Below, one piece after another: positions 13,772 to 42,000 of a stretch of 52,739 nucleotides of DNA. The notes beneath the pieces are model-generated. The model was given only the letters and a program-made list of their open reading frames with translations. It had not been told where the DNA came from and ran no database searches. The first letter of the stretch is position 1. Each line of letters begins with the position of its first letter. Source of the stretch: Schmidtea nova (lineage: Eukaryota); the NCBI GenBank assembly GCA_044892505.1, contig CM097882.1:320485786-320538524 (forward strand). Direction: 5' to 3'. A program made the position numbers and the translations under genes.

Positions 13772-14454
13772 TGTTCTTCTCGATCATATTTTAAGTTTAC
13801 TCTACGTGCTGTATTATTGCGTTATTTAAACAAAATTCAATTTTTGTCCAACATTAATAATTTAATTATTAAATTAATGTCATTATTAAACTGAAGTCTG
13901 AGGCACTATAATACATTCAAAAATTAAAAAAAAATTTAAAAAACCTGTAATTTACATTATAATATTTTTTGAATTTTGAAGTATGAAATGTAATTTAATT
14001 TTTGTGACAGTACTGCGATAATATTGTATTTCTAGTCTCTTATATTGGTTTGAAAACGGGAGATTGATGAGAATTTAAATTTTGTATCGGAATAAAAATT
14101 TTCGTATGACTTCGAAAATTAATAGCTGTAGTGTTATTGCAACCGACAACATAACATAATGTAATCAATTGTGATGAAAATGCATAGAAATATTATTCGG
14201 TTTGTCCATGGCTGCATGAATTTATAATAATAAAATTTATGATTAAAATAAACATGTATCCATTTGTGTAGTAATAATAATTATAGTAATAGAATAATAT
14301 AGTAAAATTGGTTTACATCAAACACCCAAAATAAGAAAAATTTTATTTGAATAACACAATCATTGTGCGAATAAAATCAATTATCTATGAAAATTCCTAG
14401 AAAAAAATTATAATACATTAATAAAAGAATTCAAATTAAATTAATTCTAATATT

Positions 14455-15629
14455 TTAATAAGAGCTATCCATTTCGGCATCATGTATGTCGTCTGTGGTG
14501 TTGTTTTGTTTTAATCTACCTTCTTGTTCTACTATTTCAGCTTCATTTAGACCGATCTCTTGGTAGTCTTCCTCTAAAATCTTTAGATCGACTCTTGATT
14601 CACCAAATTCGGCTTCTTCCATTCCTTCAGTAATAAACCAATGAATGAATGCTCTTTTCCTAAAGAGAAGGTCGTATTTTTTACCTATTCTGGACCAAAT
14701 TTGTTTAATAGCAGTAGAATTGGATATCATTGTTACCCCTTTGTCTGAGGGTGCCATAAATGATTCTGGTGAAACAATTGGACACTGAACATTAATACCT
14801 ATCTTTAGTCCAGTCGGACACCATTCGACAAAATTTGTCATGGCCGATTTTTGTTTCACAACAGCATCAGAGACTTCTTTAGGATTAACTAACCCACGAT
14901 AATTCAGCATAATTGAAATAAATCTTCCTCGAGCTGTATCGCATTTCAAAGATTGATGAGTCTTTGAAAATACATCTTTAGTAATTTGTTCAATTGTAAA
15001 ATTAGAACTACTAGCTCTTGAAAAGGGTTGTAATGGAGCATGGCTTAATAAAGGGAAATGTATTCTTGGATATGGTACTACATTAGTACGAATATCTCTC
15101 AAAGAAGTATGAGAAGCAGTATTATAGCGTAAAGAACAAGTTACGGAACTCACCATTGACGCTATGACTCGATTTATATTTACGAAAGTTGGAATGTTAA
15201 TCAGTAGTAATTTGTTACATATTTCAAGCAAAGCTTCATTATCAAACAGAATACTTATGTCTACGGAATCTAGAGCAGCATGGTTATGTAGCACAGCGTT
15301 ATAGGGTTCAACAATTGCTGAACTCCAATGAGGACTAGTGAAAATCGGCATTTGCACTCGAAATTTCTTTGGATAGTCAAAAACTAATTGTTCCAACGCT
15401 AGTACACTGAGACCGGATCCCGTACCCCCGCCAGTACTGTTGAACAATAAGAAACTTTCCAAATTATTTGATTTCTCAACTATTTTTCGCAATTTAGCTC
15501 TAAATTCCTTGATAATCGTTGGTCCGCAAACGAAGCTGCCTCGAGCGAAATTGTTCGACGCATCTTCTTTCCCACTTATTAATTGATTGGGATGATAGAG
15601 GCCACGGTAAACTCCAGTAACAATTTCAT
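14455..15629 (-). CDS. Divergent alpha-tubulin, last coding exon
   Basis: GKEDASNNFARG, GGGTGSG, VEPYN, YPRIHFP, FVEWCPTG, KRAFIHW..EGMEE; ends in Tyr. Acceptor TTTCTAG at 15630, phase 1. Confidence 0.95.
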
Positions 15630-16601
15630 CTAGAAATTAAAAAACGAAATTGCATTGCTTTCAATATTTATGATTAAATAAAAATTTTTCTCATTTATAT
15701 GTAATAAATTCGAAGCGCCTATTTATATTGTGAGAATACAAGTAGCGATGCATTTAAACAGTCGCCTGATGCAACGGATGAAGCTGATGAAGGTGTCAGT
15801 TCAATGCCGACGGTTTTGATGTCAATACACAAATTAATTAAATTTTTTATTACACCTGTTTTCATACAATAAGAGTTTCTATAATATAAGTTAAAAATTA
15901 TAAGTAGTAAATGTAAATTGACGTGGGTGGTAAATTTTGACTTTCCATGAAAGAAAGGTTTTTATGTGATAGACAAGAAGAAAACATAAATAATAGTATT
16001 GAGATGGGTGTTTTTTGGCTCACAAAAGAATTACTCATCTCTGAAGGAATTAGTCATCATGGTAAGTCATTGATCTAATAGTAGTGAGTCAGGCTAAATA
16101 ATGTGCCATACTTTTCTGTATGACTCATGGTCTTTGTTCTACAGAGGTTCAAAGTGGTCATATAAAAAATTTCGATGAGTCATCAATATTGAAATGAAGC
16201 CTTATCAAAAAATTTTTAAAGTCGAAACCAAGCTATCTCTAGAGCAAGAATAAAGGTCCTACGAAAAGTATCGTTAGTGTTTTGGAATCAGGAAAGTATT
16301 CTAAGACTTTTATCGCAGAAAAACTTGTTCTTATGTCACTTCAAGTGACTAGAAATGTTATCTTTGTTATTTGTTATTGAGCTACTCGTTTTGGCACATT
16401 ATTTTATAAATTTTTGTCAGTTTAAACAAAGAACTTTTTAAAAAAATTCTAAGTGAGAACAAAGACTCCAATACACCAAGAAAAAACGATCTTATGAAAA
16501 TATATTTAGTTTTTTGGAATCAGGAAAAAGTTTCTGAGACTTATTTTAAATATATTTTTTTTCATAAAGTCAATCCTTTAACCGGAAATGGGCCTTGAAA
16601 G

Positions 16602-19600
16602 CAGGGCCGGCCCTAGACCATGCGGGGCCCAAGGCAGCAAACGATGCGGGGCCCATTTACAAGGCAAAAATTTATAATTCTACATATATTAAAATAATGG
16701 GAAATAAAAAATTAAATTACTTAAATTTTTACTCTATAACAGCGTTCATACATCAATAATTACAGTTTTATTCATTTAACTGACGATCATAAAACTAAAA
16801 AAAATGTACAAATTTAAAATTAAAATGTTTTGTTTTGGCATGCTAATTGACAGTTCACTGTTCCTAACATTATAAACTATATATATATATATATATACAC
16901 TATATAGCGTTGGTTTGGTTATATCTTCTATACTTCCACCTTGTTTTTACAATTAGGCCTACAAGCAAATCTTGCGAGCTTTGGCTGCTGCAAAATCTGA
17001 AATAAGTTCATTATAGTCAAGATCCTTAGCAACTTCATTCTCAATTGACAAAATAGCTAAGTTACTGAGCCGATCTTGAATCATTGTTGATCGCATATAG
17101 GTTTTAATAAGTTTTAGTTTCGAAAAGCTTCTTTCTCCTGAACTTACAGTGACAGGAATAGTTAGAAGTATTCGAAGTGCAATGTGTGTGTTAGGAAAGT
17201 CACTATAACGCTTGTTCACTAACAGAAACTGCAAAATCTTAACAGGATTGTTGTAGGTGGCTGCAGGAATTATGGAACTCAATGATTGCAACTCTTCAGC
17301 AAGCATTAAACCATCAATATCCTTACTTTCGCCGGCTGTGAGCTTTTTCTCTAGATTCATACTGTTATTGAGTAAATCAATTTTTTGTAATTGATGAAAT
17401 TTATAAAGAAATCCAAACGAGTTATGATGCATTCGTAGTTGTTCAAATCGACTGTCCATCGACACGATTGCAACATCAACAATCTGGTTAAAAAAATCTG
17501 CGCGAAATTTTTCTTGTGGATCTACAAATCCTTCATCTTCTCCTTCATATGTAAATTGTTTTTTTCTTTTTCGCACTCTCGTCTCTTTGAAAATAGGTTC
17601 AACTTCTAAGTCCGTAACAATTTCTTTTGCAATTGCTATTGCTGTTTCAAAACCGCCATCTCTGTAAGATTTCAACCATTTGCAAGTACGTTCCATGCTG
17701 TCAATTGCAGTTGCTAGATCAACAGAAATATTTTGTAATTCTTTGCTGATGTAATTAAACTGGAACAATATGTCATACCAAAAAGCAATTGAAACAATGA
17801 AATTGAAGTTCTTAAGTTGTTTGCACAATGACTCTGCTTCACTTCGAGCTTTTGAATCACTACTTTGATCTGCAACTTCGAAAAGTGCATCATAGATTTC
17901 GCCTGCTTGATATCGCACAGCCTTTACACTTTCCACACGGCTTTCCCATCTTGTTTCACAAACTGGTTTTACTGAAATATTTCGAACATACTTGGAAAAG
18001 ATAGCCCATCGCTTTGTTGAAGCAGAAAATAAAACATAGATTTGTTGAATTATACCAAAAAACGTCATTGCATCAGGACAAGTTTTTGCCATATCACATA
18101 GCAGCAAGTTGTAGCTGTGACAGGTACAAGGGATAAAAAATGCCCTAGGATTTAATTGTAAAATAGGAGCCTGTACTCCTTACTTATGCCCTTTCATGTT
18201 CGCACCGTTGTCGTATCCTTGACCGCGGATATCAGAAACATCTAAGCCCAATCTTGTCAGTTCCAATAGTAAGACATCAAGTATGTGTTGTCCAGTACTT
18301 TCTTCTACTTCTAGAAAACGAATGAAGTGCTCGTGAATTACTTCAGAAGACTCTCCTTCTGGGCTTACATAGCGAATTGTCAATGAGATCTGTTCTTGGT
18401 GACTTTGGTCGGGTGTGCAATCAAGTATTACTGAAAAGTATTTAGCAGATTTTACTCTTTCTATAATAATTTCCCTTACCTTATTTCCCATCAACGAAAT
18501 GAGCTCGTTTTGAATTCGCTTTCCCAAGTAGTGATCATGAATTTCATCAGTTTGTATTCTTCGTATATGTTCTTGCAAAACCGGATCAAATTTTGCCAGC
18601 AATTCAACGAGACCCAAAAAGTTTCCATTGTGTGCCATATGTAGTTTATCGACTGAACTACGAAAAGCCATGTTGTGCTCAGAAAGGAATTGGACGATAG
18701 CCATTAGACGTTGAAATACACTATGCCAACGAGCCTTTTCACTGTTTATTAATTTTTGGCTCTGTTTGTCAATTGTGCATCCTTTTGTCAGCCTATTTTC
18801 CAGCTCAAACCATTGCAAAGTAGATGTCATATGTCCCTTTGATTTCTCATGATCAGAGAGTCTAACACTTGCATTTTTCCAGTCACAAATCCCATCGGAT
18901 CCCAGAGCAGACAAAGTGTTGCCAAAAAGTTTGCAACAGAAACAAAACATTTTGTTGTTAGCTGCTGAATATATAAGCCATTTTCGGTTGACAACTTCTC
19001 CATTTTCTATATGTCGTTTGCAGTAGGTTGTTGAAAATTTCCTTCTACTGTTATCTGCTGGAAAATCTTTTTCTTCAATTTTTTTGGCCCCTTGCAAACA
19101 ATTATAGAACGAGTGTATGCATTCAAATGTTCTGGCCAAGTTGCTGGATCACTAAAATCATCACTTACATTTGTCAAATTAACCAACTCTTCTGTTTCTT
19201 CGTTTGCCGATGTCCGTGTCCCTGTAATCTTTGAAGAATCAACAATCCCAACATCAGAAGTATCGATACTAGACTCTGTCTCTATGTTATTTTCATAAGT
19301 TGCTGCATCTTTGTATTCTTCAGAAGTTGACGATGTTGACGAATTTTGATGTTGTTGTACAAGAAATTTATTGAGAGATTGGGTTAATGCCTTAATTTGG
19401 GTTTCTTGCGTTGCTTTTTGTTTTTTCTTTTCATTGTCACTTTTATATTTTCTGCCAAAATCGCGATCTCGTTTTGGTGGCATATCCCCTCAGGCCCTCA
19501 ACTAATTGTCGTACTGACTCGTACAGTTATATTATAATTAAATGTTTTCTGTATAACATTTTTTTTCAACATGTATATAATAAAAAATCAAGTTAATAAC

Positions 19601-20056
19601 GAAGTTATTATAATTAATTATTATATATTACATTTTAATGATGATCAATGGCAACAATTTAAATTGCATCGGTATTAAATTTAGATGACGCAATATAAAA
19701 CGTTCCAAAACGTTTAGACGACCAAAGAGTCACAAACTTAATTTGAGTGGCGACCTATTTTTTTCATTTATTTTTTTACTTTTCTTAATATTAATAGTAA
19801 TATTTCTAAATAAATGTCATAATAGTCAGTGTCAGATTGCAGATAGTTAACTTTAATTTATTAGTACGCTATTTTTCTAATTATTTTATCCTGAAAAAAT
19901 TAAATATAAAGTTGTCTTCATACTTTGTTATAATGTTATATAAAAGACAAGTATTACGCAATAGTATTAAAATTGTAAAATGTAGTAAAAAATGTTTAGT
20001 CAGAGCGCGGGGCCCAAGGCAGTCGCCTTATTCGCCTTGCCCTAAGGCCGGGCCTG
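16602..20056 (-). mobile_element. hAT DNA transposon, 3455 bp, full length
   Basis: Imperfect TIRs CAGGGCCGGCCCTAG / CAGGCCCGGCCTTAG; 8 bp TSD CTTGAAAG at 16594 and 20057. Confidence 0.96.
16959..19483 (-). pseudogene. hAT transposase (ZMYM1-like: TTF zinc finger, DUF4371-like core, dimerization domain)
   Basis: FCFCCKLF, ILDCTPD, GQGYDNGANM, CTCHSYNL, GERSFSKLKLIK. One frameshift in the A7 run at 19079-19085 and one TAA at 18180. Confidence 0.93.
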
Positions 20057-20643
20057 CTTGAAAGTTATTTAACTTTTCAAAGTCTGGGCTACTCGTTTTC
20101 ACTCAAAAAACTTTCAAATATTGTACTTACAATTGTAATGCAACTATATAGATTGATTTCTTAATCATGTACATCTATTGCATTTGCTTTGCAGTTGGAT
20201 TGCATTATTAAAATAAAACAAGATAAAAGGTTTAATGCATTTATTTAAACTAGAAATAATCAAATATAACTATTGAAAATTTATATATTGATGATTAATT
20301 TGCAGAGTTTTGTCCCACCAACTTATATTGAAAATTTACTTTTACATTTCTAACTTAATTCTTTATCAAATCGAACTGATCATTCAAGTTTATATTCTTA
20401 TGAATTTGTCGAAATATCAAACTTGGTTATTTATTTTTCATTGTATTTTTTAATTTCAATCAATATAAGATTCAAAATATTTTTGATTCTAGTGAGGGTT
20501 CAATTAAAATATTGAATATCTTCATATAATTTCATACGAACTGTTACCAGAGTTTCATATGCTATTTCAAATCTGATTTTCAAATTATTCATTCTTTAAT
20601 AGTTTTATTGTAGGAGCTTTCAGCCATCTTGGTCTATCTACTA

Positions 20644-21375
20644 CAGTGTTGTCCAAACTGTGTGCCGTGGCGGGTGCCCAGGTGTGCCGTGAAATTTTTT
20701 TAAAAAGTCAAAAAAAAACCCTGTTTTTCCAAACAACTTAATAAAATGAAATTGAATTGTGGATATTTTAACAGTTATTTCAAATTTAAATGATAATCAG
20801 TCAATTAAGTGTGAACTTTATTTGTTTACAATCATATTTATATTTCTTACTAGAAATATTGACTATCTAAAATACGTAAGCAGCTTAATTATGTTTATTT
20901 AGATTCTGTCTGAATTGTCTGAATTTTGGGTTTTTGTTAAAGACGAATATCCAAATTTGAGTAAGAAGGCAATTGAAATATTATTACCATTTGGTTCTTC
21001 TTATCTCTGTGAACTGGGATTTTCAACTCTTACCACAATTAAATCAAAGAAGCGGGAACGTATGGTTAACATTGATCAAGAATTAAGAGTTTGTTTGTCA
21101 AAATTTCCACCACGATTGGAACTTATTTGTTCGGAACATCAAGCACATAAATCTCATCAACTATGTTTTATGAATTTTTCATTCACTAATTTTTCTAAAT
21201 TTAAAATTTTTTACATTAAATTTATTTCAAGTAAATAAGTTTTTCATTTCTTATTAAAAGATTAGTAAAAGTGCAATAAAAAATTGCAAATAAAGCAAAA
21301 AAAAATTTAGGTGTGCCGCGAAAATTTTTAATTCAGCCAAGTGTGCCGTGGCTCAAAAATGTTTGGACAACACTG
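20644..21375 (+). mobile_element. Non-autonomous hAT (Buster/Charlie-type) deletion derivative, 732 bp
   Basis: Perfect 15 bp TIR CAGTGTTGTCCAAAC; 8 bp TSD ATCTACTA with central TA. Retains the dimerization-domain fragment LLPFGSSYLCELGFS (20915-21238). Confidence 0.95.
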
Positions 21376-22108
21376 ATCTACTATATCCAACAAATCTAAA
21401 AACTCAGCTGTTTCAGGTCAAATGCATTTTGTTTTATTTTGTCCTTGAACTAAAACAATTGTTTTCTTTCCCTAACAATATATTATGAATGAGCTTATTA
21501 TTAAAAATTGTATTATTATTTTGATTTAAATAATTTTTTAAAATTTAGTTTATACTAAAGTTATGTACTTATTGTGATTGTTAATTGAATTTGTTTAAAT
21601 TGCATATGTATTGCATTGGTTTTGTTAACCAATCACAGTTATGCACATCAACTGCAAGTCTTTTTCTGTATAAATACTAAGTTCTAATATTTTCATTAAG
21701 ATAAGTCAACAAATTTTTGTTACAAATCTCATTAATGGATTGATGTCAGATGAAAAAGATTATGACGTAGTATCTATTTTAAAAATCTTTGTATCGTGTA
21801 CTGAGAAAATATGTCAAGATACTAATTGATCTTTCAACCAAAAGTCGATTCAAGCCAAGGAAAGTCATTTTAAACTTGTATTTTGTCCTCTATTTGAATC
21901 AGACATAAAATGGTCGCATATCGTAGTGATTTTTATGTATATAAAACAAATTTTATAGAAATAACTTACTCCCCATGATTACTATTTTCAATGGTCTGTT
22001 GAGCTATATGCTTTTTTATAATTTCAAATAATAATAATATTTAGGTAATTGAAAATGAAATATGTCCATGGGTTGAACAAAATGGAAATTGCCAAAAATT
22101 GAAAGAAC

Positions 22109-22345
22109 GCAATAGATGTACATGATTAGTAAAGCAATCTATATCTAGCTGCATTACAATTGTAACTACAATATTTGAAAGTTTTTTGCGTGAAAACGAG
22201 TAGCCCAGACTTTGAAAAGTTAAATAACTTTCAAGGCCCATTTCCGTTTAAAGGACTGCCCCTATGAAAAATTATTTTTAAAGATAATTTTTGATAAGTC
22301 TTTATTTCAATAATGATGACTCGCCGAAATTTTTGACATGTACTC
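22109..22345 (-). repeat. Inverted paralog of the repeat into which the hAT inserted (16150-16601 + 20057-20200)
   Basis: Reverse complement aligns across the hAT junction with a single CTTGAAAG (22228-22235). Confidence 0.9.
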
Positions 22346-22598
22346 TTTCAGCGGAAGAAGACAACGATGTACCTGGTGAAGATACTATTATGTACGTACA
22401 ATAATATGTAATACATAGTATGTCTTATTTTCTCTTGTTTTCTATTCCATATATGTATGTAATAATGGGTAATATACAGTTCTAAAATGGTAACTAGAGA
22501 GGTTTATTTCATGTCTAGAATGTCAATGTCCTTATTTAAAGTGCTTTTATTAAATTTTAAACTTTGAATACAAAAATGTTCAATTTTTTAACAAATTA

Positions 22599-23435
22599 CA
22601 GGGATTTCCACCCCAATCTGACATCGTCTCATCAATTTCTGACATCATCCCATTAACTTCTGACAAGCGCCTGATATAAGTGTGACTAAAAATTATTTTT
22701 TTAGTAAAGCGAAATAATTTTCGTTGATTTAAAAATCATTTTATAGTGTTGTCCAAAAAAGGAAAAACTGTATAAGCAAAAAAATAATAAGTAGATTTAT
22801 GATTCACATGAGTATTTCTGAAGAGCAACATAAAAAACAACATAAAAATCAATATTATATTTTTATCATTCTATTTTTTATATATTTGCATGCATATAAA
22901 CCTGTCATTGGCTCGTTAAAATACACTGTTTAATTGGCTTTATGTTATTAGTTTAATGGGTACCATATGTATACTATACACCTCCCATGTCAGCTATAAC
23001 CACAATTTTTACATTATAGTCTATTAATTATTTGTTACTATAGGTACTAATCACCCTCGGTGTTATGATGTCCAAGAATATGTTTCATAAATTTATAACA
23101 CATTGCAGATTAAAGGCCAATATAATACGTATAACAATTTTTTATAGTTTGAACATATCTATTCCAGCCATAAAGAATCTGCAAATATTGCGATATAAGT
23201 AAAAAATAATACAACACAATGTTATCGTTACACAATTTAATATTTTATGTAGTTTAGTTCCTGTATTTGTAATAATTGTGTACTAATATTTTTACCGACA
23301 TATATTGTAACATGTTACATGACATTAACAAAATGAATAGTTTTATATTCATTGATAATTTTTTAGTCATACTATATATTTCAGGCGCTTGTCAGAAATT
23401 GATGAGAACATGTTAGATTGGGATGGGAAACTCTG
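22599..23435. mobile_element. TA-flanked MITE with ~55-75 bp imperfect TIRs (Tc1/mariner-like targeting)
   Basis: CAGGGATTTCCACCCCAATCTGACAT...TGACAAGCGCCTGA is inverted at 23381-23435; TA on both sides. Confidence 0.75.
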
Positions 23436-23644
23436 TATCCTACTTCGCGGAAATTAACTTATCGCGGTAAAGTATGGAACGCATTAAGCGCAATAAATGA
23501 GTGATTACTGTATAGTATTAAAATATTTAAAGTAAAACAAATACTTATTAAACCACTACTACCTTTCGATGTCTATTTACACTTAAGTGACATCTGGTGT
23601 AGATAAAATAGTGACATCGTCCAAATATAATATATATATCAGTC

Positions 23645-25290
23645 TAGTCAGATATGTAAGGATTAACCTGTTCAATTCCATAATTTAAAGGGTTATGATC
23701 TTCATTATATCCTTTAATACGATTTGAGTTCTTTTAAATTTTGGATAATTTCTTGCATTCCGAGAACTAGGGAAAAATTCTTGACTTTGACTGCAAGGGT
23801 CGGTTTTAACCATTAAATTCATCGACTCTTGGCAGTTTCTAAATTCTAGTTTTAATGATGCAGTTAAAATTCTCACTTCTTTGCCTTTGACTCGATCTGA
23901 ATTTACTGGTACTATTGTTGATTGTAAGAGTATTTTTCCTTCTAACTTTGCTACATCTTTAGAAATTCATAACAACACTGACGAGTTATCTCCAATCTGT
24001 GAAGTTGTTAATCAAAATATATACGATAATGCAATTTACATTGATATAAATAATTTGTAAGGATGGGCTTTAAGTCCAAAATTACCATGTGGCGAGTTTT
24101 CTTGGGTTATCGATAACGAAGAATTAAATAATTTAATAAATTTGATGGACACGGATCTCGAAAAACTTACATTTGGTATAGCTTTTGAAGTGAATCTTGA
24201 AATCACTTCAAGTATTTCAAATTATTTCCCTGTTACCGCAGAGAAAATGTGTGGTCCGGGTTCAAATGTTGAGAAGCTGCTGATTACACATTATCCCAAG
24301 TTGAACTATGTTCTTCATTGGAGGCTTCTCAAGCTTTTTGTTTCTTTGGGTTTCTAAATAACACGAGTTCATTGGGCAGTTCAATACAAACAGAATCCGA
24401 TTTTTAAAAAATACATAGAAACTAATACCTAGTTTAAGGCGACTTCTTCTATCGCTTTAGACAAGAACTATTACAAACTAATAATAGTCTCAATGGAAAG
24501 ACTGTGGAGAATCTTAAGAAACAACTATGTAATTCAGCATCAAAACTAATTACATACACATCTAAAACGACTTTTCGAAAACTTATAAACTTGACGATGA
24601 CTTGATATCTATGCTGCTTAATGAAGATTCTGTATTTTTATACAGACCTAGTTACATAGGACAAACTGTACTGAATCTATCTAAACTTAGAATGTATCAG
24701 CTCCAGTATAAAGAGTTACAACAATATCGTAATAATTTTAACTGTGAGATTAATATATTAGCTGGTGGCACAAATTCTTTCTTTCTCGAGGTAAAAATTG
24801 TAAAGTATATGTTTTTTTGTCGGCTATGGTTAGAGATAGACTTTTATACACGTCAAATTAGGACCATAATCATCTATTGTATTCTAGAAACCTTGATTCT
24901 GTCACTGGCAAGTTTAAAGACGAGAATAAAGAGTTTAAATATTAGGAGTGGGTGTTTTTAAGACCAAAATTTTATAGTTTGTTAGGTGATAAAAAGTATT
25001 CAATCTAAGAGAATAACATTGAAGGGTGCTGACTTCAAACATCAGTCGTACTTGGATTGTTATAATAATAATTCGATGGTTTCTGTTGCTCAATCACGAA
25101 TAGTTAGCAAAAATAATCAATTATTTACTAATAAAAATCATAAAGCAGCCTTGACGAACTTGGATTATAAAATGCTTTGAGTGAGGGAAAATGAAAGTCT
25201 TGCATTTGGCATTATAAGGGATGGGACTCGTTTATAGACCAATCAAAAGATCAGTTAGCGTTCCAGATCCAGATCCACCGCTCAATTCAG
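23645..25290 (+). pseudogene. polB: Second, heavily decayed Polinton protein-primed polB fragment (ExoII to C-terminus, internal deletion)
   Basis: FHNLKGYDLH, KFIDSWQF, YIDINNL*GWALSPKLP, VLHWRLL, RPSYIGQTVLNLSKLRMY and AGGTNS, co-linear with 10080-12000. Confidence 0.92.
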
Positions 25291-26520
25291 ATTATATCTT
25301 AAATTCAAATTTTTATTTAATAAAACTTTGATAAAAATAATTGGTTTCATTGTATTTAGTTTTATATTTCTTTATCTTATTATGTTTATCATTCGGGTTT
25401 TTCATCTTGATTAGTGTAATATTTTTATGATTTGTTTCAATCGTTTTTTATTTAATGTAAAGATAATTATTTCTGTTTACAAATTGCATCCGCTCTTTCA
25501 GTTCCCTTCTGGTGAATAGTCTTTATATCTTTCGAAAACTATCACAATTCTCGCATTCATTTCATTAGTTTTCATAGTTCTCACACTCATTTTTCTAAAA
25601 TTTATATTACTAAAATTATATAATATATCGAAAGTTATCGGTTAAAAAGATATGGAACTACTATTCGAAATGTTAGTCGCTCAATTAAAACAAAAATATC
25701 ATTCAATTAATTTAAAAACATGTTATCGTCTGTGTTACTTGTTACTTGTTACGAGTAATAATTAATGTTTTGTGTGTTTTGACTCTACCAGCAGTTGTCA
25801 CGGAGACTATACAATTGTGTCTGTGTTTATATTATTAACAGCTACTTCAGGGAATATATATTGTAGTGTGTTTACCTTAGCAACAACAGCTTTGGGGAAT
25901 CATATATTGACGCACGTGTTTACTCTAGCAATCGTTGCTATGTGAAAAAAGTGGTGCAGGCACATGTAACGTTTAATAAATGTTTTGAATTTTATTTTGA
26001 TATATGCTTTATCTCATTTGATTTACCCGTCATTAAAATGATGATAAGAGAGACTCAGAAGATGCCCAGCCAAGAAAACCCGATGCGTTCGAAAAACTGA
26101 ACCGAAGAGTCAGAATCGGTTCTCAAACCATCGCTTATTAAATTATATAGGTCGATAAGGTGAAAGTAAATTCGAATAGAATCAGGAAGTATAGGTGTGA
26201 TCCTATTCAAATATTTTAGGAAATAAATAGGCGTTGATTTTAGATATTATAAGGTGAGGTTATAGAAAGTTAGGAGTTGATAAATTTAAGTGGACCTTTA
26301 AAAGAGAAAGAAGTTATGCGCGTAAGTCTTTTTATCGGCAGCAGTAGTTTTGCAAAAAAAGCTCACCTGCTCATATAATTCTCGCACCAATGTGAACATT
26401 ACCAAAACAGATTACTAAGGAGTAACTCTGAGTACACAAGTGAGGTAGATATAACATATTCATAATGGTGTGTGGGTTACAGTAATCCCTAGCGACAACA
26501 ATTTTTAAAAACCTATACAC

Positions 26521-26525
<5 letters not shown>

Positions 26526-26570
<45 letters not shown>
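26526..26570. repeat. (TA)n microsatellite (others at 16878, 28566, 30811, 42181, 45147, 49937, 50351)
   Basis: Direct reading. Confidence 0.95.
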
Positions 26571-26573
<3 letters not shown>

Positions 26574-27982
26574 CCACTGTCTGCCCATCCCACCTATATC
26601 TAATTTTACGTAAATTTAGTTAATATTATACTACTTTTAAAAATAAGTAGCATAATTATAATAATTAACTTTTATCGTATTAAGTTTCTGTCATTTAATC
26701 CATCCACCATTTCCTAAATCTACCACTGAAAATTATCAGTAAATAAAATCTCATAACTTAAAAAAGAATTATTACAAATATTAACGAATTATTGTATTTC
26801 GTTGTTGTAAAGTATGTAAAAAAGTATGTAAAATATATGTTATTCATTCAACATACATTATATTGAAGGAAAACAAGTTTGCATGAATCTTTTGGGTTGT
26901 AGGATTTTAGTCGGCTTATTATCTGACTACTAGTGCTCCTATAATTGACAAATCACCAACGGCAAACACAAATTAAATTCCACTAATTTACACAATGACA
27001 AATAAATCAATACAATTTTTATTTTCTACTCAAACATTCAGCATTCTCTCTTCTGTTCAAGCGATAAGGGTACATTGCCCTTTCTGGTACGCTTCTTGAT
27101 TCGCTAATATTAGATTCCACATAATCACTCTCTTCACTTTTCCGATAAGTTTTCGTTTTGACCAGAATGGCAATTTGCTGTTAATTGTTGTTTCTTTTAT
27201 AGTTTTCCATTACAATAATAATATAATTTAATTTTCCTGAAATTAAAAAATAATTATATTGGTGGGTTGTTGATCGTCAATATGACCTTGATGTTACTAT
27301 GATTCATCATCAACAACTCAACAAATAAAACATTAGTCAAAACCATTTTATTGCCCGTCACAAAGTAACATTGGTAATGCAACAAATGGGTGGATGTCCG
27401 CAAATAGTGAGCATCGAAAAAAATTGAAACTTTGAATGACCGAACATCTCAGTGGGTTAAAGGGTGACCAAAAGAAGGATTCTAGACGTTAATTATTTTG
27501 AATAAACCTTGCCCTTGGCCAATCCACTACTCATCATATAGCCAGGTGTGAGATGAAGCAGTCTTGGATGTTTGGGCTCAACTTAGATGAAAAAATGAGT
27601 CAGAAATCAGAAGGAACCCCAGCTGACTGACGATTCACCTAAGAGATTAATGACAGTACAACAAATCGCTGGACAGTCATCTGAACGTATAGAACTCTCA
27701 TTAGTTAAAAAAAATATTATTTATTCTAAATACTAAGAATAATGGTAATAAAAAGATTTAAGTAAAGGTGCCGATGTGACAGAGATCCTCGTTAGAAAAT
27801 TCATATTGCTAAATGTGAAATAATGAGAGGTAAAATAATCAATTCAAATAATAGGTAAATATTAATTTTTATTTTTGATAAAATGATAACTCAAGCAATA
27901 ATTCATAATAACATGATAGTCAAACACATAATAGGATGAGATAAACGCATAAATAGAATAATGGATTAAAATAATAGCTTAA

Positions 27983-28222
27983 CCTCTTAAGTGGTTTATT
28001 TCGTCAAACGAAATGCGCTCCTCAGCGGCGAGTTTTTTTATCCACTAGTGTATATATACGTCTTGGGCATAGTGTTACAAAAATAAAATAATATCTTATT
28101 GGATGATATTTATTAAGATAATATGTTAACAAACAAAATATTTTTATGCGAATATATTCGTCTTATGCCTTTTGTAATGTATATGTTGATGACGTATAAA
28201 TCCGTCATAGCCACTTAAGAGG
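27983..28222. mobile_element. piggyBac-type MITE, 240 bp
   Basis: TTAA at 27979 and 28223; 12 bp TIR CCTCTTAAGTGG. Confidence 0.85.
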
Positions 28223-28563
28223 TTAATATAAAATGTAATAATGAACTAAAGCATGATAACAATAAATAGGCAATATTTAAATGAATAATAATAAAATACT
28301 GGGTATGGAACGTTTAGGGGGCATGATCCCGATGGCTCCCTGTTCTTACGTTTGATAGATCATTAATCCGGAGTTAGTCGTCGAATAGCGGTATCGAAAA
28401 CGGATTGTAATATTCTTGGTTTTTCTAAGTTGTCTTCCTCGCGGAGGTGTTAGGTTCCTTTGCTCGACAGTGGTACTTGTAAATAGTTTCTGTGTAGGGG
28501 TTCGCCTTAAACAGCTACACCCGGTTGGTAGTGCAAAATTCTGATTTTGCTAAAATTTATGGC

Positions 28564-28612
<49 letters not shown>

Positions 28613-28616
<4 letters not shown>

Positions 28617-28998
28617 CTAGAAGGAATTTTGATTCTTCCAAAATTAAATTTAACAATTTTAAGAAAATTTAGTTTATTATTTTTGTATAGAACTTTAATA
28701 AAACTTTAAATAATTTATTTATAATCTAAAGATCTACTTTAAAATTAAAGATTTTTCTAATTTAGTTTAATTTGCTAAATTTTTATCTAAAGCAATTTTA
28801 TTTTATATTTTGTTAGTTTTTACGGTAAAAATCGAAATTTTCCTTCTGAAAATATGTGTAATTTTATTTCATAGTTGCTGTTTTTATGTTATATTTGTGT
28901 TTTTAACGCGTATGCTTGATGCGCTTTTGTTCAGTTTAATTTTTAAACGTGTTTTATTTAATTGTTCATGTGTTATGTGGTTACTTTAATTTTCGCAG
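28613..28998 (+). repeat. Dispersed repeat, copy 2, directly after a (TA)n tract
   Basis: Aligns with 13302-13771. Confidence 0.85.
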
Positions 28999-29146
28999 AC
29001 CTGAAATGATTATTGCTCCTCCTAATACAATTTATTTCGGTTTGCAATTCTGGTAATTTAATTTTGAATTGGATTTCCCTCTAGTTTGAGTTTCCTATTA
29101 GTCCGGGTTTTTCATGTACTCGACTTTGCTAGATAACTAAAATATT

Positions 29147-29339
29147 ATCATAATTATCTTTTAGTTTCACCTTTGATCTCTTTTTTTAGATCAATAATTT
29201 TCGTAATTGTATGACTATAGATCAAAAATATTTTTTGGGGGTTTATAGTAATAAAAATAATAAAATCTATAGTCATGCAATTACGAAAATTATTGATATA
29301 AAAAAGAGATCAAAGGTGAAACCAAAAGATAATTATGAT
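29147..29339. repeat. Foldback hairpin/MITE: ~76 bp arms, 42 bp spacer
   Basis: 29147-29222 is the near-perfect reverse complement of 29265-29339. Confidence 0.88.
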
Positions 29340-29754
29340 TAACACTTATATTGAGTAAATCTTTTTTTAAATATACAGCTTTATTTAAAAAACTAAATTG
29401 TTTTTTTAAATAAAATTTTAATTTTTTATAATATTTATCAATGGGTGATATTTATTCTGCAATTGTTTAAAAAATATGTTTAAATTATGTTTCATTATTT
29501 TACATCAGCTTAAAAGTTTTTTCTGTCTCGATTTGTCTTTTCAGGAAAATGGTCAATTTACTTAAAGAAATTTATACAAGTCAATTATAATAAAGCTAAC
29601 TGATATATAAACAGTCCGTCTATGGTATATCATAAAGAAAAAATAAAGTCAATGTAGAAATACTCATATAAATGAACAAGACAATATTCTAAACTATTAG
29701 AAGTACATTTATTAAATCAGTAATAAAAAATGTTTGAAATTTAAACAAACTTAC

Positions 29755-29968
29755 TAATAACTGATGATTCCGTATCAACCAATATAGCTCTAGGATTGTA
29801 TTTTCCTCCTTCAACTTCATGGAAAAAAGTTTCCATTGAAATCGCACTTTTATCCCCAACACATTCACCATCAGGACAAACACTATGCTCAATGCATATA
29901 AGTTCCCAAATTGCGTTTCCCATTTGTATTCCTCCCTGGCCTACATGGATTACCGTGACTTCAAGTGG
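29755..29968 (-). CDS. Divergent alpha-tubulin, upstream coding exon (start codon exon not located)
   Basis: PLEVTVIHVGQGGIQMGNAIWEL...PDG...ETFF...PRAILVDTE. Acceptor TTTAG at 29969, donor GTAAGT at 29754. Splicing to 15629 is in frame at the conserved codon-76 phase-1 intron position. Confidence 0.92.
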
Positions 29969-38379: not shown

Positions 38380-41300
38380 GTCAAACAGAAATAAGTTATC
38401 AAAATAGAAATGAAAGAAGCGAAAGACAAATTGATGGAGTGTAACCCGTGGTAGAACAATATAATGAGAGGACAACTATGGATCGTAGACCACCGACCAC
38501 CACCTTTAGTTTCAATGAAACATATCGCAAGTAAAATTTATAATAGATGTTGTTGTCTACCTGAGCCAGCAGAAGAAAGGTTAAGATCTGGTCAATGCTT
38601 TTGTTGTGGACAAAGTGATCATATGCGATTTGAGTGTCCTTTGAAGGACAAATGCGGTAAAGACGGTTATTCATTTAGAAATTGCAATTTGTTAGTGAAA
38701 TCAAGAAGCAGTGCACAAAGACTGGAACAAAGAGTGTACTGTATACACGAAGAAGACGATGACAGATCAGAGGAATTGATAGCCCCAGTCATACATAATG
38801 TTGAGACATAAAAAAACCAAGAAGACCCTGTTGTCTACATTTCTTCAGTAGGGTCGAGACAGTAGATGAGTATAAAAAACGAAATGTTGTAAAGAAGGAT
38901 GTGATGTTTAAGAAGGATGATGATAGAAAGTGTAGTACGATTGAAATGAATGAATTTTATGTAGAGATGCTATGGGATTCAGGAGCTTCAATCAGTGTAA
39001 TGAGTTAGAAATGTTGGAGATTGATTGGCAGTCCAACATTGATGGAAAGCAGAATACGGTTGAGTGGAGTATTTTCAAAAGAAGATGAGAAACCTCTCGG
39101 AAGCGTTAAAATCGTTGCAAAATGGAACAACAAATGTAGAGAATTGAATGTTATTATTGTCAGAAAAATTTATCCAGATTTTATAGGAGGTGTAGATACC
39201 ATGAGAATATTTGGTATGGAGCTTAAAGAAGTCAATAATATAAATGCATAGTTAGTTACCCAGAGATTTACAGATTTTGATCGGTTAGAGTTTGCGTTAT
39301 CGACGCTTAAGTTGGACAAGAATTTGAAGTTGGGTACTTTAATATCTAAGTTTAGCGACATTTTTATGGCATCCAGATTTGACTTAGGCCATACAAAAGT
39401 AATAACAGATGAAATAATCGACTTCGGGTCCTCCAATTTTTCAAAATCCAAGAAGACAGCCCATGCATTTAGAAGTCAAAATTGAAGAGTTAATAAAGAA
39501 TTTATTAGAAGCTGGAATTGTGAGAAAATGTCAGAGTCCGTGGAACACACCACTAGTAATAGTCGGAAAACCGGATGGCTCTATAAGAATGTGTCTAGAT
39601 TTTAGGCTATTAAATTCGATTACAGAAAAGTTTTCATTCCCGATACCAGACATGCAGTTATTATTGGATTGTCTCGATAAGTCAAAGATATTTTCATCAA
39701 TTGATTTAGGTCAAGCCTATTATCAGGTAGAGTTGCATGAAAATTCCCAAACCAAGACGGCATTTAGTACAAAAGAAGGACAATTCTGTTTTAACAGGTT
39801 ACCATTTGGTTTATCAACAGCTCCTGCCACTTTTCAGAAACTGATGCATAAGATATTGGAAGGATTAATTTTCAAAGGAGTGGTTGTCTATCTTGATGAC
39901 GTTTTAATATATGATGAAAATCAGGAAACTCATGATAAACTTCTACTTGAAGTATTCACACGCATTAGAGATGCCGGTTTAAAAGTTAATCCCGAGAAAT
40001 GCGCGTTCTATAAAAGAGTATTAAATTTCATTGGTCATACAGTGAGTGAAAAGGGAATTCAAACAAACAAAAGAAGGATTTCAGAAATTGAAAATGCAAC
40101 TGAACCCGAAGAGTGTTTCAGAATTGAGGTCATTATTAGGTTTAACTAATTATTATTGGCGGTTTATCAAAAATTATTCAATGATAGCGGCACCTTTGTA
40201 TACCGGAACAACAGGAAATGATAAAATTATTGTTTGGACTGAAGAATGTAAAAAAAGGTTTTATCAATTTAAAGAAACGTTTGTGTGAAGCACCAATATT
40301 AGAATTTCCAAGGGCAGATCGAATATTTATTCTTGATACGGATGCTAGTTTTGGAGCCATATGTGCAGTTTTATCTCAGATTAAGGAAGATGGTACTGAG
40401 GGAGTGATAGCGTATGGTTCAAGACATTTAACAACACATGAAATTGGATATTATGTTACTAGAAAAGAGTTGTTGGCACTTCACGAGTTTATTGTACATT
40501 TCAAGAAATTTTTATATGGAAGAAAATTTGTAGCCAGAACGGATCACAACGCATTGACATTTATGAACACGACAAAGAAACCAATAAGCCCGCAGTTTCA
40601 GACATGGATGGCAAATTTATCTGAATACGATTTTGAGTTACAATATAGGAAGGGAGAAGAACATGGAAATGCAGATGGCATGTCTCGTTTAAATAATGCC
40701 ATATGTGCTCATTGTCAGATGAAACACAAGGATGCCAAAGAGGCAAAATGTAGAACTCGGTACATTAATAGTCTACAAGGATGTTCAAATATTATGAAAA
40801 TTATTAAACAGAAGCAAAACGAAGACAAAATTATTACAGAAATCATATTACATCTTAATGGAAATGAGGCTCATATATCTTATGAAACAATCAGTAACAG
40901 TATATTCAAGTATCTAAAAATATTACAGATACAAGATGAAGTATTGATGATTAATGCAGATGGAAAACTTGCAGTTGTAGTACCTGGCAAGTACGTAAAA
41001 ACATTGGTAAATTATTTTCATATTGAACTGTGCCATCTGGGTATCAAGAAAACTTTATTTTATTTAAAAGACTTTTTCTTTTGGCCATCGATGAATCAGA
41101 GTATTACTGAATGTATTAATAAAGTCAACATTTGTGCTAGTAGAAAGATTTATCAAGGAAGAACAAAGGAAATTTTATTGCCAAGAACAGAACGGTTTTT
41201 AGAACAGATAGTAGTCGATATTGCATATATGGAGACAAAAGCAAGTAAGAAATATGATAGTGATAATAGATCGTTTTAGTAAATTGGTCAGCTTATCAGC

Positions 41301-42000
41301 AACAAGTACGCAGGATGAATCAACAATTTTGAATGTCATTTTAAATAATTGGGTATATTGTTTTGGTAGACCACAAAGCATTCTTACAGAAAGAGGAAGA
41401 ATTTTTGAAGGATCAATGTTTCGTGATTGGATGGAGAAATTTGGTATAAAACAAGAATTCAGTTCACCATATCAACATCAATCAAATGGTTTAGCAGAAC
41501 GAATCATAAGAACAGTTCGGGACATGTTGGCAACATCATTGACAGAGATTAGAACAGAGAATAATTGGTGCAATTTGTTACCAAAGATTGAATTTAGTTT
41601 GAATGCTACAATACAAAACTCAACAAATTTCTCACCTTTTGAAATTGTATATGGTCGGAAGATTAATTTATATTCTAGATTAGGACATATACAAAAAAGC
41701 AAAGAAGAAATTGTGGATAAAACAAAAACTAATCTAGAGAAAGCAGCTACAACAATGCAAAATAGAGATTTATAACACCAGGGTACTCGAGTATTCACGG
41801 TGGGAGAGAAAGTATTAGTTCGCTTGGAACCACATAGACGAAAGAAGGAGGGAATCCAATATGAAAGACCTTACAAAATTTTAAAATTCTTATCACCAAG
41901 ACAAGTTGAATTACAATCTCCAAACTTAATCAAATCAAGAAGAATTGAATGGCTGAAGATATTAAAAGAAAATGAAGAGGAGGAGAGTGATGTTCAATAA
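38380..42000 (+). mobile_element. Ty3/Gypsy retrotransposon gag-pol relic, no LTR pair found
   Basis: CCHC knuckle CFCCGQSDHMRFEC, protease LWDSGASIS, RT YLDD, RNase H ILDTDAS/TDHNAL, integrase IVVDI...NGLAER, in PR-RT-RH-IN order; multiple stops and frameshifts. Confidence 0.95.

What the first reader, a model, noticed from the sequence alone, without database searches (positions are those of the whole stretch)
14455..15629. Intact alpha-tubulin with a rewritten GTPase-activating T7 loop
Seen: canonical SLRFDGALNVDLTEFQTN reads SLRYNTASHTSLRDIRTN (about 15085-15135), i.e. G246T, N249H, D251S and E254D (codon 15096-15094), while GGGTGSG, the reading frame and the splice sites are intact. Known: the alpha-tubulin GxxNxD loop and E254 activate GTP hydrolysis in the adjacent beta subunit, and E254D slows hydrolysis. 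Inference: an isotype giving hydrolysis-poor, hyperstable microtubules, or a non-lattice role, for example in sperm or specialised cilia.
Basis: partly seen in the sequence, partly recalled or inferred. Interest (0 to 1): 0.72.

Follow-up and report, generated by a model that had tools for sequence, protein, structure and literature searches.

The report
Divergent planarian alpha-tubulin, rewritten catalytic loop
This is a real, transcribed and selectively maintained alpha-tubulin paralogue of the planarian Schmidtea nova whose GTPase-activating loop has been replaced by a new, conserved motif, and it is one of at least 48 such divergent alpha-tubulin-like genes in that genome, most of which have lost the catalytic glutamate.

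Summary
Window 15629-14458 (minus strand) is the last exon of an alpha-tubulin gene, covering residues 76 to the end. Its T7 loop reads SLRYNTASHTSLRDIRTN where canonical alpha-tubulin has SLRFDGALNVDLTEFQTN, and GGGTGSG and the other GTP-binding motifs are kept.

- **Gene structure:** The preceding exon lies 14.1 kb upstream at 29968-29755. The methionine exon was not found.
- **Expression:** One RNA-like public run has contigs confined to the exon. They stop exactly at the predicted acceptor and carry a poly(A) tail 15 nt after an AATAAA.
- **Genome:** The assembly is Schmidtea nova schNov1, an exact match in size and contig number.
- **Selection:** An orthologue in another flatworm is 57% identical. 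It has the same intron position and nearly the same rewritten T7 (13 of 18 residues), but Glu at 254. dN is 0.33 with saturated dS, so omega is at most about 0.1-0.2. This is not a pseudogene.
- **Wider family:** S. nova has at least 48 intact divergent alpha-like loci. Only 10 keep E254 (18 Gln, 9 Val, 4 Asp). Beta-tubulins show no such radiation.

A hydrolysis-poor lattice subunit is the best mechanism, but it is inferred, not shown. The lateral-contact loops are also rewritten, so a non-canonical assembly or capping role remains open. The scan had flagged other divergent alpha-tubulin-like genes on other DNA of this genome.

The parts
14458..15629 (-). Last coding exon, alpha-tubulin residues 76 to the C-terminus (391 codons counting the split first codon, Asn as A from the previous exon plus AT). 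The stop TAA is at 14457-14455.
   Evidence: (Pfam Tubulin 1.8e-29, Tubulin_C 5.7e-31). RNA-like contigs end at 15629. AF2 model pLDDT 87.3; its best matches are alpha-tubulin chains, TM 0.87.
15082..15135 (-). Rewritten T7 loop and start of H8, SLRYNTASHTSLRDIRTN (residues 241-258). The Asp254 codon is at 15096-15094.
   Evidence: 13 of 18 residues are identical in the orthologue L031.
15412..15432 (-). T4 signature GGGTGSG, intact. Other N-site motifs are also kept: NNFARG at 15555-15538, VEPYN at 15312-15298, DNEA at 15243-15232 and NINR at 15180-15169.
14995..15036 (-). Rewritten M-loop (lateral contact element), 14% identical to canonical. It holds the only non-synonymous polymorphism seen, A206T at 15015.
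14327..14454 (-). 3' UTR, with AATAAA at 14347-14342 and the poly(A) addition site at about 14327.
   Evidence: (X4 contig of 1264 nt with an 18-T loose end before 14327).
15630..29754 (-). Phase-1 intron of 14.1 kb (donor GT at 29754-29753, acceptor AG at 15631-15630), at the position between residues 75 and 76 that the paralogues and the orthologue share. It is inflated by a hAT transposon at 16959-19483.
29755..29968 (-). Upstream coding exon for residues 2-75 (PLEVTVIHVGQGG...SSVI), preceded by an acceptor AG at 29970-29969. It contains no ATG.
   Evidence: It has the clade-typical N-terminus shared with L002 and L070.

Best explanation
This is a functional, fast-evolving alpha-tubulin paralogue of Schmidtea nova, belonging to a planarian radiation of divergent alpha-tubulin-like genes. 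What is shown: it is transcribed, spliced and polyadenylated. Its frame is kept under purifying selection. It keeps the tubulin fold and every motif that holds the non-exchangeable GTP on the face that binds beta-tubulin. Its T7 loop, which in canonical alpha-tubulin inserts Asp251 and Glu254 into the beta-tubulin nucleotide pocket of the neighbouring dimer to trigger GTP hydrolysis, has been replaced by a different motif, Y-x-x-A-x-H-T-S-[LI]-R-[DE]-I-R. That motif is conserved in the orthologue. What is inferred: the protein pairs with an ordinary beta-tubulin, of which the genome has about nine near-identical copies. The resulting dimer activates hydrolysis poorly wherever it is incorporated, because Asp251 is lost and, in this species, Glu254 is shortened to Asp. 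The result would be locally or globally stabilised, slowly turning-over microtubules, that is, a genetically encoded brake on hydrolysis.
For: Identity and fold. Gene model. Transcript: run X4 has depth 117 only between 14327 and 15629, contigs that end at 15629 with one extra letter, a poly(A) tail, and zero depth in the flanks, while X1-X3 are DNA-like and run through the intron. Selection: orthologue L031 has dN 0.33, saturated dS and omega 0.11-0.18. The open frame has a chance probability of 8e-15. Polymorphisms are 2 synonymous and 1 non-synonymous, with no disabling variant in four samples. Orthology: the window gene and L031 pair at 97 SH-aLRT, sister to L002 plus P0006 at 100. Conservation pattern: T3, T4, T5, T6 and H8 are kept, T7 is 9% identical to canonical but 13/18 identical to the orthologue. 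Mechanistic precedent: E254D in human TUBA1B gives about 4-fold slower hydrolysis and almost no catastrophes (PMC7018511). Family context: 38 of 48 divergent alpha-like loci lack E254, and there is no matching beta radiation.
Against: No biochemical or localisation data exist. The M-loop (14% identical to canonical), H3 (27%), H10 (33%) and the S9-S10 loop (31%) are also rewritten, so co-assembly into a standard lattice is uncertain. An acidic residue is still present at 254 (Asp here, Glu in the orthologue), so some catalysis may survive. The start codon was not located. Expression rests on one run of unknown tissue, read as contigs only. dS is saturated, so omega is only a rough upper-bound figure and averages over two long lineages.
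Confidence: 0.55

Rival explanations
1. The protein has a non-lattice or end-capping role. It still dimerises with beta-tubulin through its conserved GTP face. Its rewritten minus-end face (T7, H10) and lateral loops stop normal longitudinal or lateral contacts, so the dimer caps minus ends, nucleates or templates non-canonical arrays, or buffers beta-tubulin.
For: T7 is 9%, H10 33%, the M-loop 14% and H3 27% identical to canonical, while the GTP-face motifs are kept. Alpha-like genes are greatly diversified but beta-tubulins are not. The new loop is conserved, which suggests a new interaction and not mere loss.
Against: H8 (TNxVPYPR), the H10-S9 stretch and H11-H12 remain 58-70% canonical. 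The predicted fold overlays lattice alpha-tubulin at TM 0.87. A C-terminal Tyr and a moderately acidic tail are kept, and these are features of lattice tubulin.
Confidence: 0.25
2. It is an ordinary dynamic isotype. Asp254, or Glu254 in the orthologue, still activates hydrolysis adequately, and the loop changes are compensated drift in a fast-evolving, tissue-restricted paralogue such as a testis gene.
For: An acidic residue is kept at 254 in all four members of the subclade. The whole protein evolves fast, with an end branch of 0.51 against about 0.02 for canonical copies.
Against: Asp251, Gly246 and Asn249 are all replaced. E254D alone already slows hydrolysis 4-fold in an otherwise perfect loop. 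T7 is the most changed segment of the protein relative to canonical.
Confidence: 0.13
3. It is a transcribed relic: a gene that lost its first exon or its function recently and has not yet accumulated disabling mutations.
For: No ATG-bearing first exon was found, and the sister paralogue has ATG|gt only about 58 nt upstream whereas here nothing comparable lies within 322 nt. The locus is riddled with transposons.
Against: 462 codons are open across two exons. Splice signals are intact and the acceptor is used. There is a poly(A) signal and tail. Omega is far below 1. There is no disabling variant in four samples. Flatworm spliced leaders end in AUG and could supply the start at the exon's acceptor (PMC12582326).
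Confidence: 0.07

Closest known systems
Canonical alpha-tubulin (for example human TUBA1B, and the S. nova canonical copies such as L005)
   Same: It has the Tubulin and Tubulin_C domains and the same fold (TM 0.87). It keeps the N-site GTP motifs (GQxG, NNxARG, GGGTGSG, VEPYN, DNEA, N228), the alpha-type S9-S10 loop length, H8, a C-terminal Tyr, and the intron positions after the ATG and between residues 75 and 76.
   Different: It is only about 45% identical to canonical alpha-tubulin, whereas canonical S. nova L005 is 88% identical to the Hydra protein. In T7, 1 of 11 residues is retained. D251, G246 and N249 are lost and E254 is Asp. The M-loop, H3 and H10 are rewritten, the K40 loop is 3 residues shorter, and the tail is weakly acidic.
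Engineered human TUBA1B E254D, E254A and E254N mutants (PMC7018511, PMC8764682)
   Same: The same residue is changed, and E254D is exactly the substitution seen here. It gives slower hydrolysis, long GTP caps and stable microtubules.
   Different: Those are single laboratory substitutions in an otherwise canonical protein. Here the change is natural, comes with ten other loop changes, and Asp254 is specific to this species while the orthologue keeps Glu.
Beta-tubulin T7 loop (non-catalytic Lys254 facing the never-hydrolysed N-site GTP)
   Same: It is a natural example of a tubulin T7 loop that binds a GTP pocket without activating hydrolysis. The subclade has gained the basic residue at 253 (Arg/Lys) that beta-tubulin also carries, LRK in S. 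nova beta.
   Different: Position 254 here is acidic, not Lys. By phylogeny the protein is an alpha-tubulin, not a beta-tubulin.
Known divergent alpha isotypes (Tetrahymena alpha-like tubulins, Drosophila alphaTub67C, mammalian TUBAL3, Fasciola hepatica isotypes)
   Same: These are lineage-specific, faster-evolving alpha-tubulin paralogues with presumed specialised roles.
   Different: Fasciola alpha isotypes are 72-95% identical to each other (PMC3820024 abstract). This gene is about 45% identical to canonical and sits in a radiation of at least 48 genes. The T7 state of the other named isotypes was not examined here; they are cited from memory.

Membership tests
Alpha-tubulin (by descent) | Tubulin/FtsZ GTPase domain plus Tubulin C-terminal domain | tested here: met
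   Pfam PF00091 at 1.8e-29 and PF03953 at 5.7e-31, both above the curated cut-offs.
Alpha-tubulin (by descent) | Groups with alpha-tubulins and not beta-tubulins in sequence searches and in a tree | tested here: met
   All 60 PDB hits shown are alpha chains at E of 1e-110 to 1e-115. In the tree rooted on S. nova beta-tubulins, the alpha plus alpha-like group has 100 support.
Alpha-tubulin (by descent) | Alpha-type gene structure: intron straight after the ATG and intron between codons 75 and 76 | tested here: inconclusive
   The 75/76 phase-1 intron is present and shared with L031, L070 and the paralogues. Exon B starts at an acceptor exactly where the post-ATG intron ends in L002 and L070, but the ATG exon itself was not found.
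Alpha-tubulin (by descent) | Ligands of the non-exchangeable (N-site) GTP: T1 GQxG, T3 NN, T4 GGGTGSG, T5 VEPYN, T6 DNEA, aromatic 224, N228 | tested here: met
   All are present. A12G and Y224F are the only changes.
Canonical, catalytically competent alpha-tubulin | T7 loop GxxNxDxxE with Asp251 and Glu254 that activate hydrolysis at the beta E-site | tested here: not met
   G246T, N249H, D251S and E254D. It should therefore be filed as an alpha-tubulin-derived paralogue, not as a canonical alpha-tubulin.
Canonical, catalytically competent alpha-tubulin | Conserved lateral-contact elements (M-loop, H3, H1-S2 loop) | tested here: not met
   The M-loop is 14% and H3 27% identical to canonical, and the H1-S2 loop is shorter and diverged.
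Canonical, catalytically competent alpha-tubulin | Acidic C-terminal tail ending in Tyr | tested here: inconclusive
   The terminal residue is Tyr, but the tail has only 10 acidic and 2 basic residues in 34 and no poly-Glu run.
Canonical, catalytically competent alpha-tubulin | Forms a heterodimer with beta-tubulin and polymerises | not testable with these tools
   This needs biochemistry or multimer modelling.

The most novel reading that the evidence does not exclude
Planarians carry a large, alpha-specific radiation (at least 48 intact genes in S. nova) of tubulin subunits that have systematically given up the GTPase-activating glutamate. These would be a genetically encoded toolkit of hydrolysis-dead or hydrolysis-slow lattice subunits, or minus-end caps. 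Cells of an animal that, from the author's knowledge of Azimzadeh et al. 2012, has lost centrosomes would use them to set microtubule stability and organisation by isotype choice and not by MAPs. This gene is an expressed member whose new T7 motif is conserved across species.
Probability: 0.2. Interest if true: 0.85.

Novelty: new variant of a known kind. Interest (0 to 1): 0.58.

Why it matters
Glu254 and the GxxNxD loop of alpha-tubulin are treated as invariant, because they drive the GTP hydrolysis that underlies dynamic instability. Until now their alteration has been studied only with engineered mutants. A naturally maintained, expressed alpha-tubulin with a rewritten loop, sitting in a family where 38 of 48 members lack the glutamate, would be a natural experiment on how far hydrolysis control can be delegated to isotype composition. 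It offers ready-made sequences for recombinant tubulin work, and RNAi-tractable targets in planarians. It also flags that automated annotation and tubulin-marker usage in planarians may lump functionally very different proteins under the name alpha-tubulin.

Tried and rejected
- **Close orthologues in the 5.8-billion-protein word index.** Two searches were run (the second restricted to residues 150-330). Only P0005 (58-63% identical) and P0006 came up, both from one Logan run. No Schmidtea orthologues were retrievable, so a lineage-resolved dN/dS could not be done.
- **Exhaustive phmmer against 1.84 billion cluster representatives.** No representative was more than 48% identical to the query. 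The subclade is essentially absent from public protein sets. P0005 itself is not a representative.
- **Pairwise dN/dS.** NG86 and YN00 failed because dS is saturated. Only the LWL85 and ML figures are usable, and only as rough bounds.
- **Search for the ATG exon.** No ATGGTRNGT was found upstream. There are 15 plain ATGGT sites within 22 kb and none is decisive.
- **Literature.** No paper in the held library describes a planarian alpha-tubulin radiation or a natural E254-less alpha isotype. The S. nova genome paper does not mention tubulin. Absence from this library does not prove it is undescribed.
- **TE-captured fragment, considered and rejected.** Beta-tubulin pieces are captured by LTR elements in this genome (earlier notes). 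That reading is excluded here by the conserved intron positions and the orthologue.
- **Joined exon model.** The joined exon B plus exon C protein was deliberately not built, searched or folded. The exons were handled separately by reference, so the AF2 model lacks residues 1-75.

Full report
**What is in the sequence**

On the minus strand, window 15629-14458 is one open frame of 391 codons, followed by TAA at 14457-14455. Pfam finds the tubulin GTPase and C-terminal domains. A search of the solved structures aligns it to residues 76-443 of alpha-tubulin chains at E about 1e-115, with no gap around the T7 loop.

The loop reads SLRYNTASHTSLRDIRTN (15135-15082), against canonical SLRFDGALNVDLTEFQTN. 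The Asp254 codon GAT sits at 15096-15094 and GGGTGSG at 15432-15412. Eleven of the 18 positions differ in all.

**Gene model**

A tblastn with a Hydra alpha-tubulin and with P0006 found the exon for residues 2-75 at 29968-29755.
- Its donor (A|GTAAGT, GT at 29754-29753) and the acceptor at 15631-15630 are both phase 1. Together they rebuild an Asn codon at the position of Asp76.
- The 14.1 kb intron holds a hAT transposon at 16959-19483. This fits the intron inflation by transposons reported for this species (PMC11410931).
- The upstream exon starts at an acceptor (AG at 29970-29969) and has no ATG.
- The closest paralogue (L002) and its orthologue (L070) have the classic alpha-tubulin arrangement...ATG|gtaagt, an intron of about 58 nt, then ag|CC(A/T), giving Met-Pro-x-x. 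The exon here has the same Pro-x-x start and the same length, so it belongs to this gene.
- No ATG|gt lies nearby. There are 15 ATGGT sites within 22 kb upstream.
- Alternatively the start may come from a spliced leader. Flatworm leaders end in AUG, which can serve as the initiator, and Schmidtea trans-splices (PMC12582326).

The first codon therefore remains unlocated. I did not build or search a joined exon model. The exons were treated separately, by reference.

**Expression**

All four public runs that hold the stretch come from one study.
- In three of them (X1-X3) contigs run through the exon, intron and downstream DNA at even depth, so they look like DNA.
- In the fourth (X4) depth is 117 between 14327 and 15629 and zero outside. 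A 1264-nt contig ends in 18 T before 14327, which is a poly(A) tail on the minus strand 15 nt after AATAAA at 14347-14342. Short contigs stop exactly at 15629 with one extra, non-genomic letter.

This is the signature of a spliced, polyadenylated mRNA that uses the predicted acceptor. The tissue is unknown, and contigs cannot rank expression. Across the runs there are two synonymous variants (14896, 15298), one non-synonymous variant (A206T at 15015, in the M-loop), and nothing disabling.

**Organism**

The assembly has 283 contigs and 1,251,382,582 bases, and its second contig is 455,729,997 bases long. These figures are exactly those of Schmidtea nova schNov1 in Table 1 of PMC11410931.

**Relatives and selection**

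Two word-index searches and one exhaustive search of 1.84 billion representatives found nothing closer than about 48%, apart from two proteins from a single Logan run.
- P0005 is 57-58% identical. Its genomic contig L031 shows the same exon start and the loop SLRYENAQHTSIREIRTN.
- In a maximum-likelihood tree of 65 sequences, the window gene pairs with L031 (SH-aLRT 97).
- That pair is sister to L002 plus P0006 (SH-aLRT 100).
- All of these lie inside a nine-gene S. nova clade (SH-aLRT 99).

The duplication therefore predates the split of the two species, and L031 is the orthologue.

Between the orthologues dN is 0.33 and dS is saturated (1.8 to 3), so omega is about 0.11-0.18 at most. The end branch is 0.51 substitutions per site, against about 0.02 for canonical copies. 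The gene evolves very fast but stays under constraint. By chance, a 391-codon open frame at this composition has probability 8e-15.

**Which parts are kept**

Against canonical alpha-tubulin, the motifs that bind the structural GTP and face beta-tubulin within the dimer are kept: T3 at 73%, GGGTGSG, VEPYN, DNEA and N228, with Y224F the only change in this exon. H8 (70%), H10-S9 (67%) and H11-H12 (58%) are also kept.

The rewritten segments are T7 (9%), the M-loop (14%), H3 (27%), H10 (33%) and the S9-S10 loop (31%).

The new T7 is nonetheless 13/18 identical between the orthologues, above the 57% average. It is a maintained new motif, not decay. All four subclade members share three changes: loss of G246, loss of D251 (to Ser or Gly), and a basic residue at 253. 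Asp at 254 is unique to the S. nova gene; the other three keep Glu.

An AlphaFold2 model of the exon-C protein has pLDDT 87.3 and pTM 0.86. Confidence dips across the residue blocks that hold T7. The model overlays lattice alpha-tubulin at TM 0.87-0.88.

**Family context**

This changes the picture most. A six-frame search of the genome found 106 scored tubulin matches, a lower bound. I aligned 68 loci.
- About 15-18 are canonical or near-canonical alpha copies with SLRFDGALNVDLTEFQTN.
- 48 are divergent alpha-like exons with open frames.
- Among those 48, position 254 is Gln in 18, Glu in 10, Val in 9, Asp in 4, and another residue in 7. D251 is kept in 35 and G246 in 12.
- Beta-tubulin shows about seven intact copies 94-100% identical to the query (two more carry one in-frame stop), a handful of split divergent copies, and many broken fragments. 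It has no comparable radiation.

Loss of the catalytic glutamate is thus a family-wide, alpha-specific trend. This gene is one of its milder cases at 254 but one of the more extreme across the whole loop. The scan's first readers had separately flagged two other divergent alpha-tubulin-like genes elsewhere in this genome.

**Mechanism**

The following is established knowledge. Asp251 and Glu254 of alpha-tubulin complete the active site at the beta E-site of the next dimer. E254A or E254N abolishes hydrolysis. E254D slows it about four-fold, giving long GTP caps and almost no catastrophes (PMC7018511, read; PMC8764682 and PMC10319017, listed).

With D251S plus E254D plus loss of the Gly and Asn that shape the loop, a dimer containing this protein should activate hydrolysis poorly. 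With an intact GTP face it should still pair with beta-tubulin. I therefore favour a hydrolysis-attenuating lattice subunit (0.55).

The rewritten lateral and H10 elements keep a non-canonical assembly or capping role alive (0.25). Retained adequate catalysis (0.13) and a transcribed relic (0.07) are less likely.

**Novelty**

By descent this is an alpha-tubulin. It fails the catalytic-loop and lateral-loop criteria of a canonical one. I found no description of such natural variants or of the planarian radiation in the searchable literature, though that library is incomplete. I rate it a new variant of a known kind. It is moderately to highly interesting, chiefly because of the family-wide pattern.

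Noticed in passing
G000 genome-wide (loci L002-L069): There are at least 48 intact divergent alpha-tubulin-like exons, falling into about 8 well-supported clades. 38 of them lack Glu254 (18 Gln, 9 Val, 4 Asp, others). Beta-tubulins are not diversified in this way.
   Followed up: partly
G000:C1:455870882-455871973, C2:33838097-33839161, C2:194201047-194202144, C2:161603550-161604656: In several divergent alpha-like loci the open frames run on to about 730-930 aa. This suggests long C-terminal extensions or fusions on a tubulin body.
   Followed up: no
L052, L054, L055: One divergent subclade has a two-residue insertion inside the T7 loop (SHRYxxEG..H.DV.EL) while keeping Glu254.
   Followed up: no
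window 16959-19483 (minus): A hAT transposon lies inside the tubulin intron. Its ORFs carry DUF4371 and the hAT dimerisation domain.
   Followed up: partly
window 39463-41775 (plus): Pol ORFs of an LTR retrotransposon (RT, RNase H, integrase), about 10 kb upstream of the tubulin exon B.
   Followed up: partly
G000, many places: There are dozens of beta-tubulin fragments 70-85% identical to the canonical gene and full of stops. This agrees with earlier notes that LTR elements of this genome capture beta-tubulin mRNA pieces.
   Followed up: no
window 15543-15629, run X4: The RNA-like assembly breaks into several 57-59 nt contigs here. Minor variants carry a one-letter gap (depth 3-13 against 70-86). 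This could be sequencing error, an allele or a minor isoform.
   Followed up: no
L070:170-230 and 330-375: In the other flatworm, the sister paralogue has tiny introns (about 56 nt and about 45 nt) at the two positions where the S. nova gene studied here has an unlocated first intron and a 14.1 kb second intron.
   Followed up: partly
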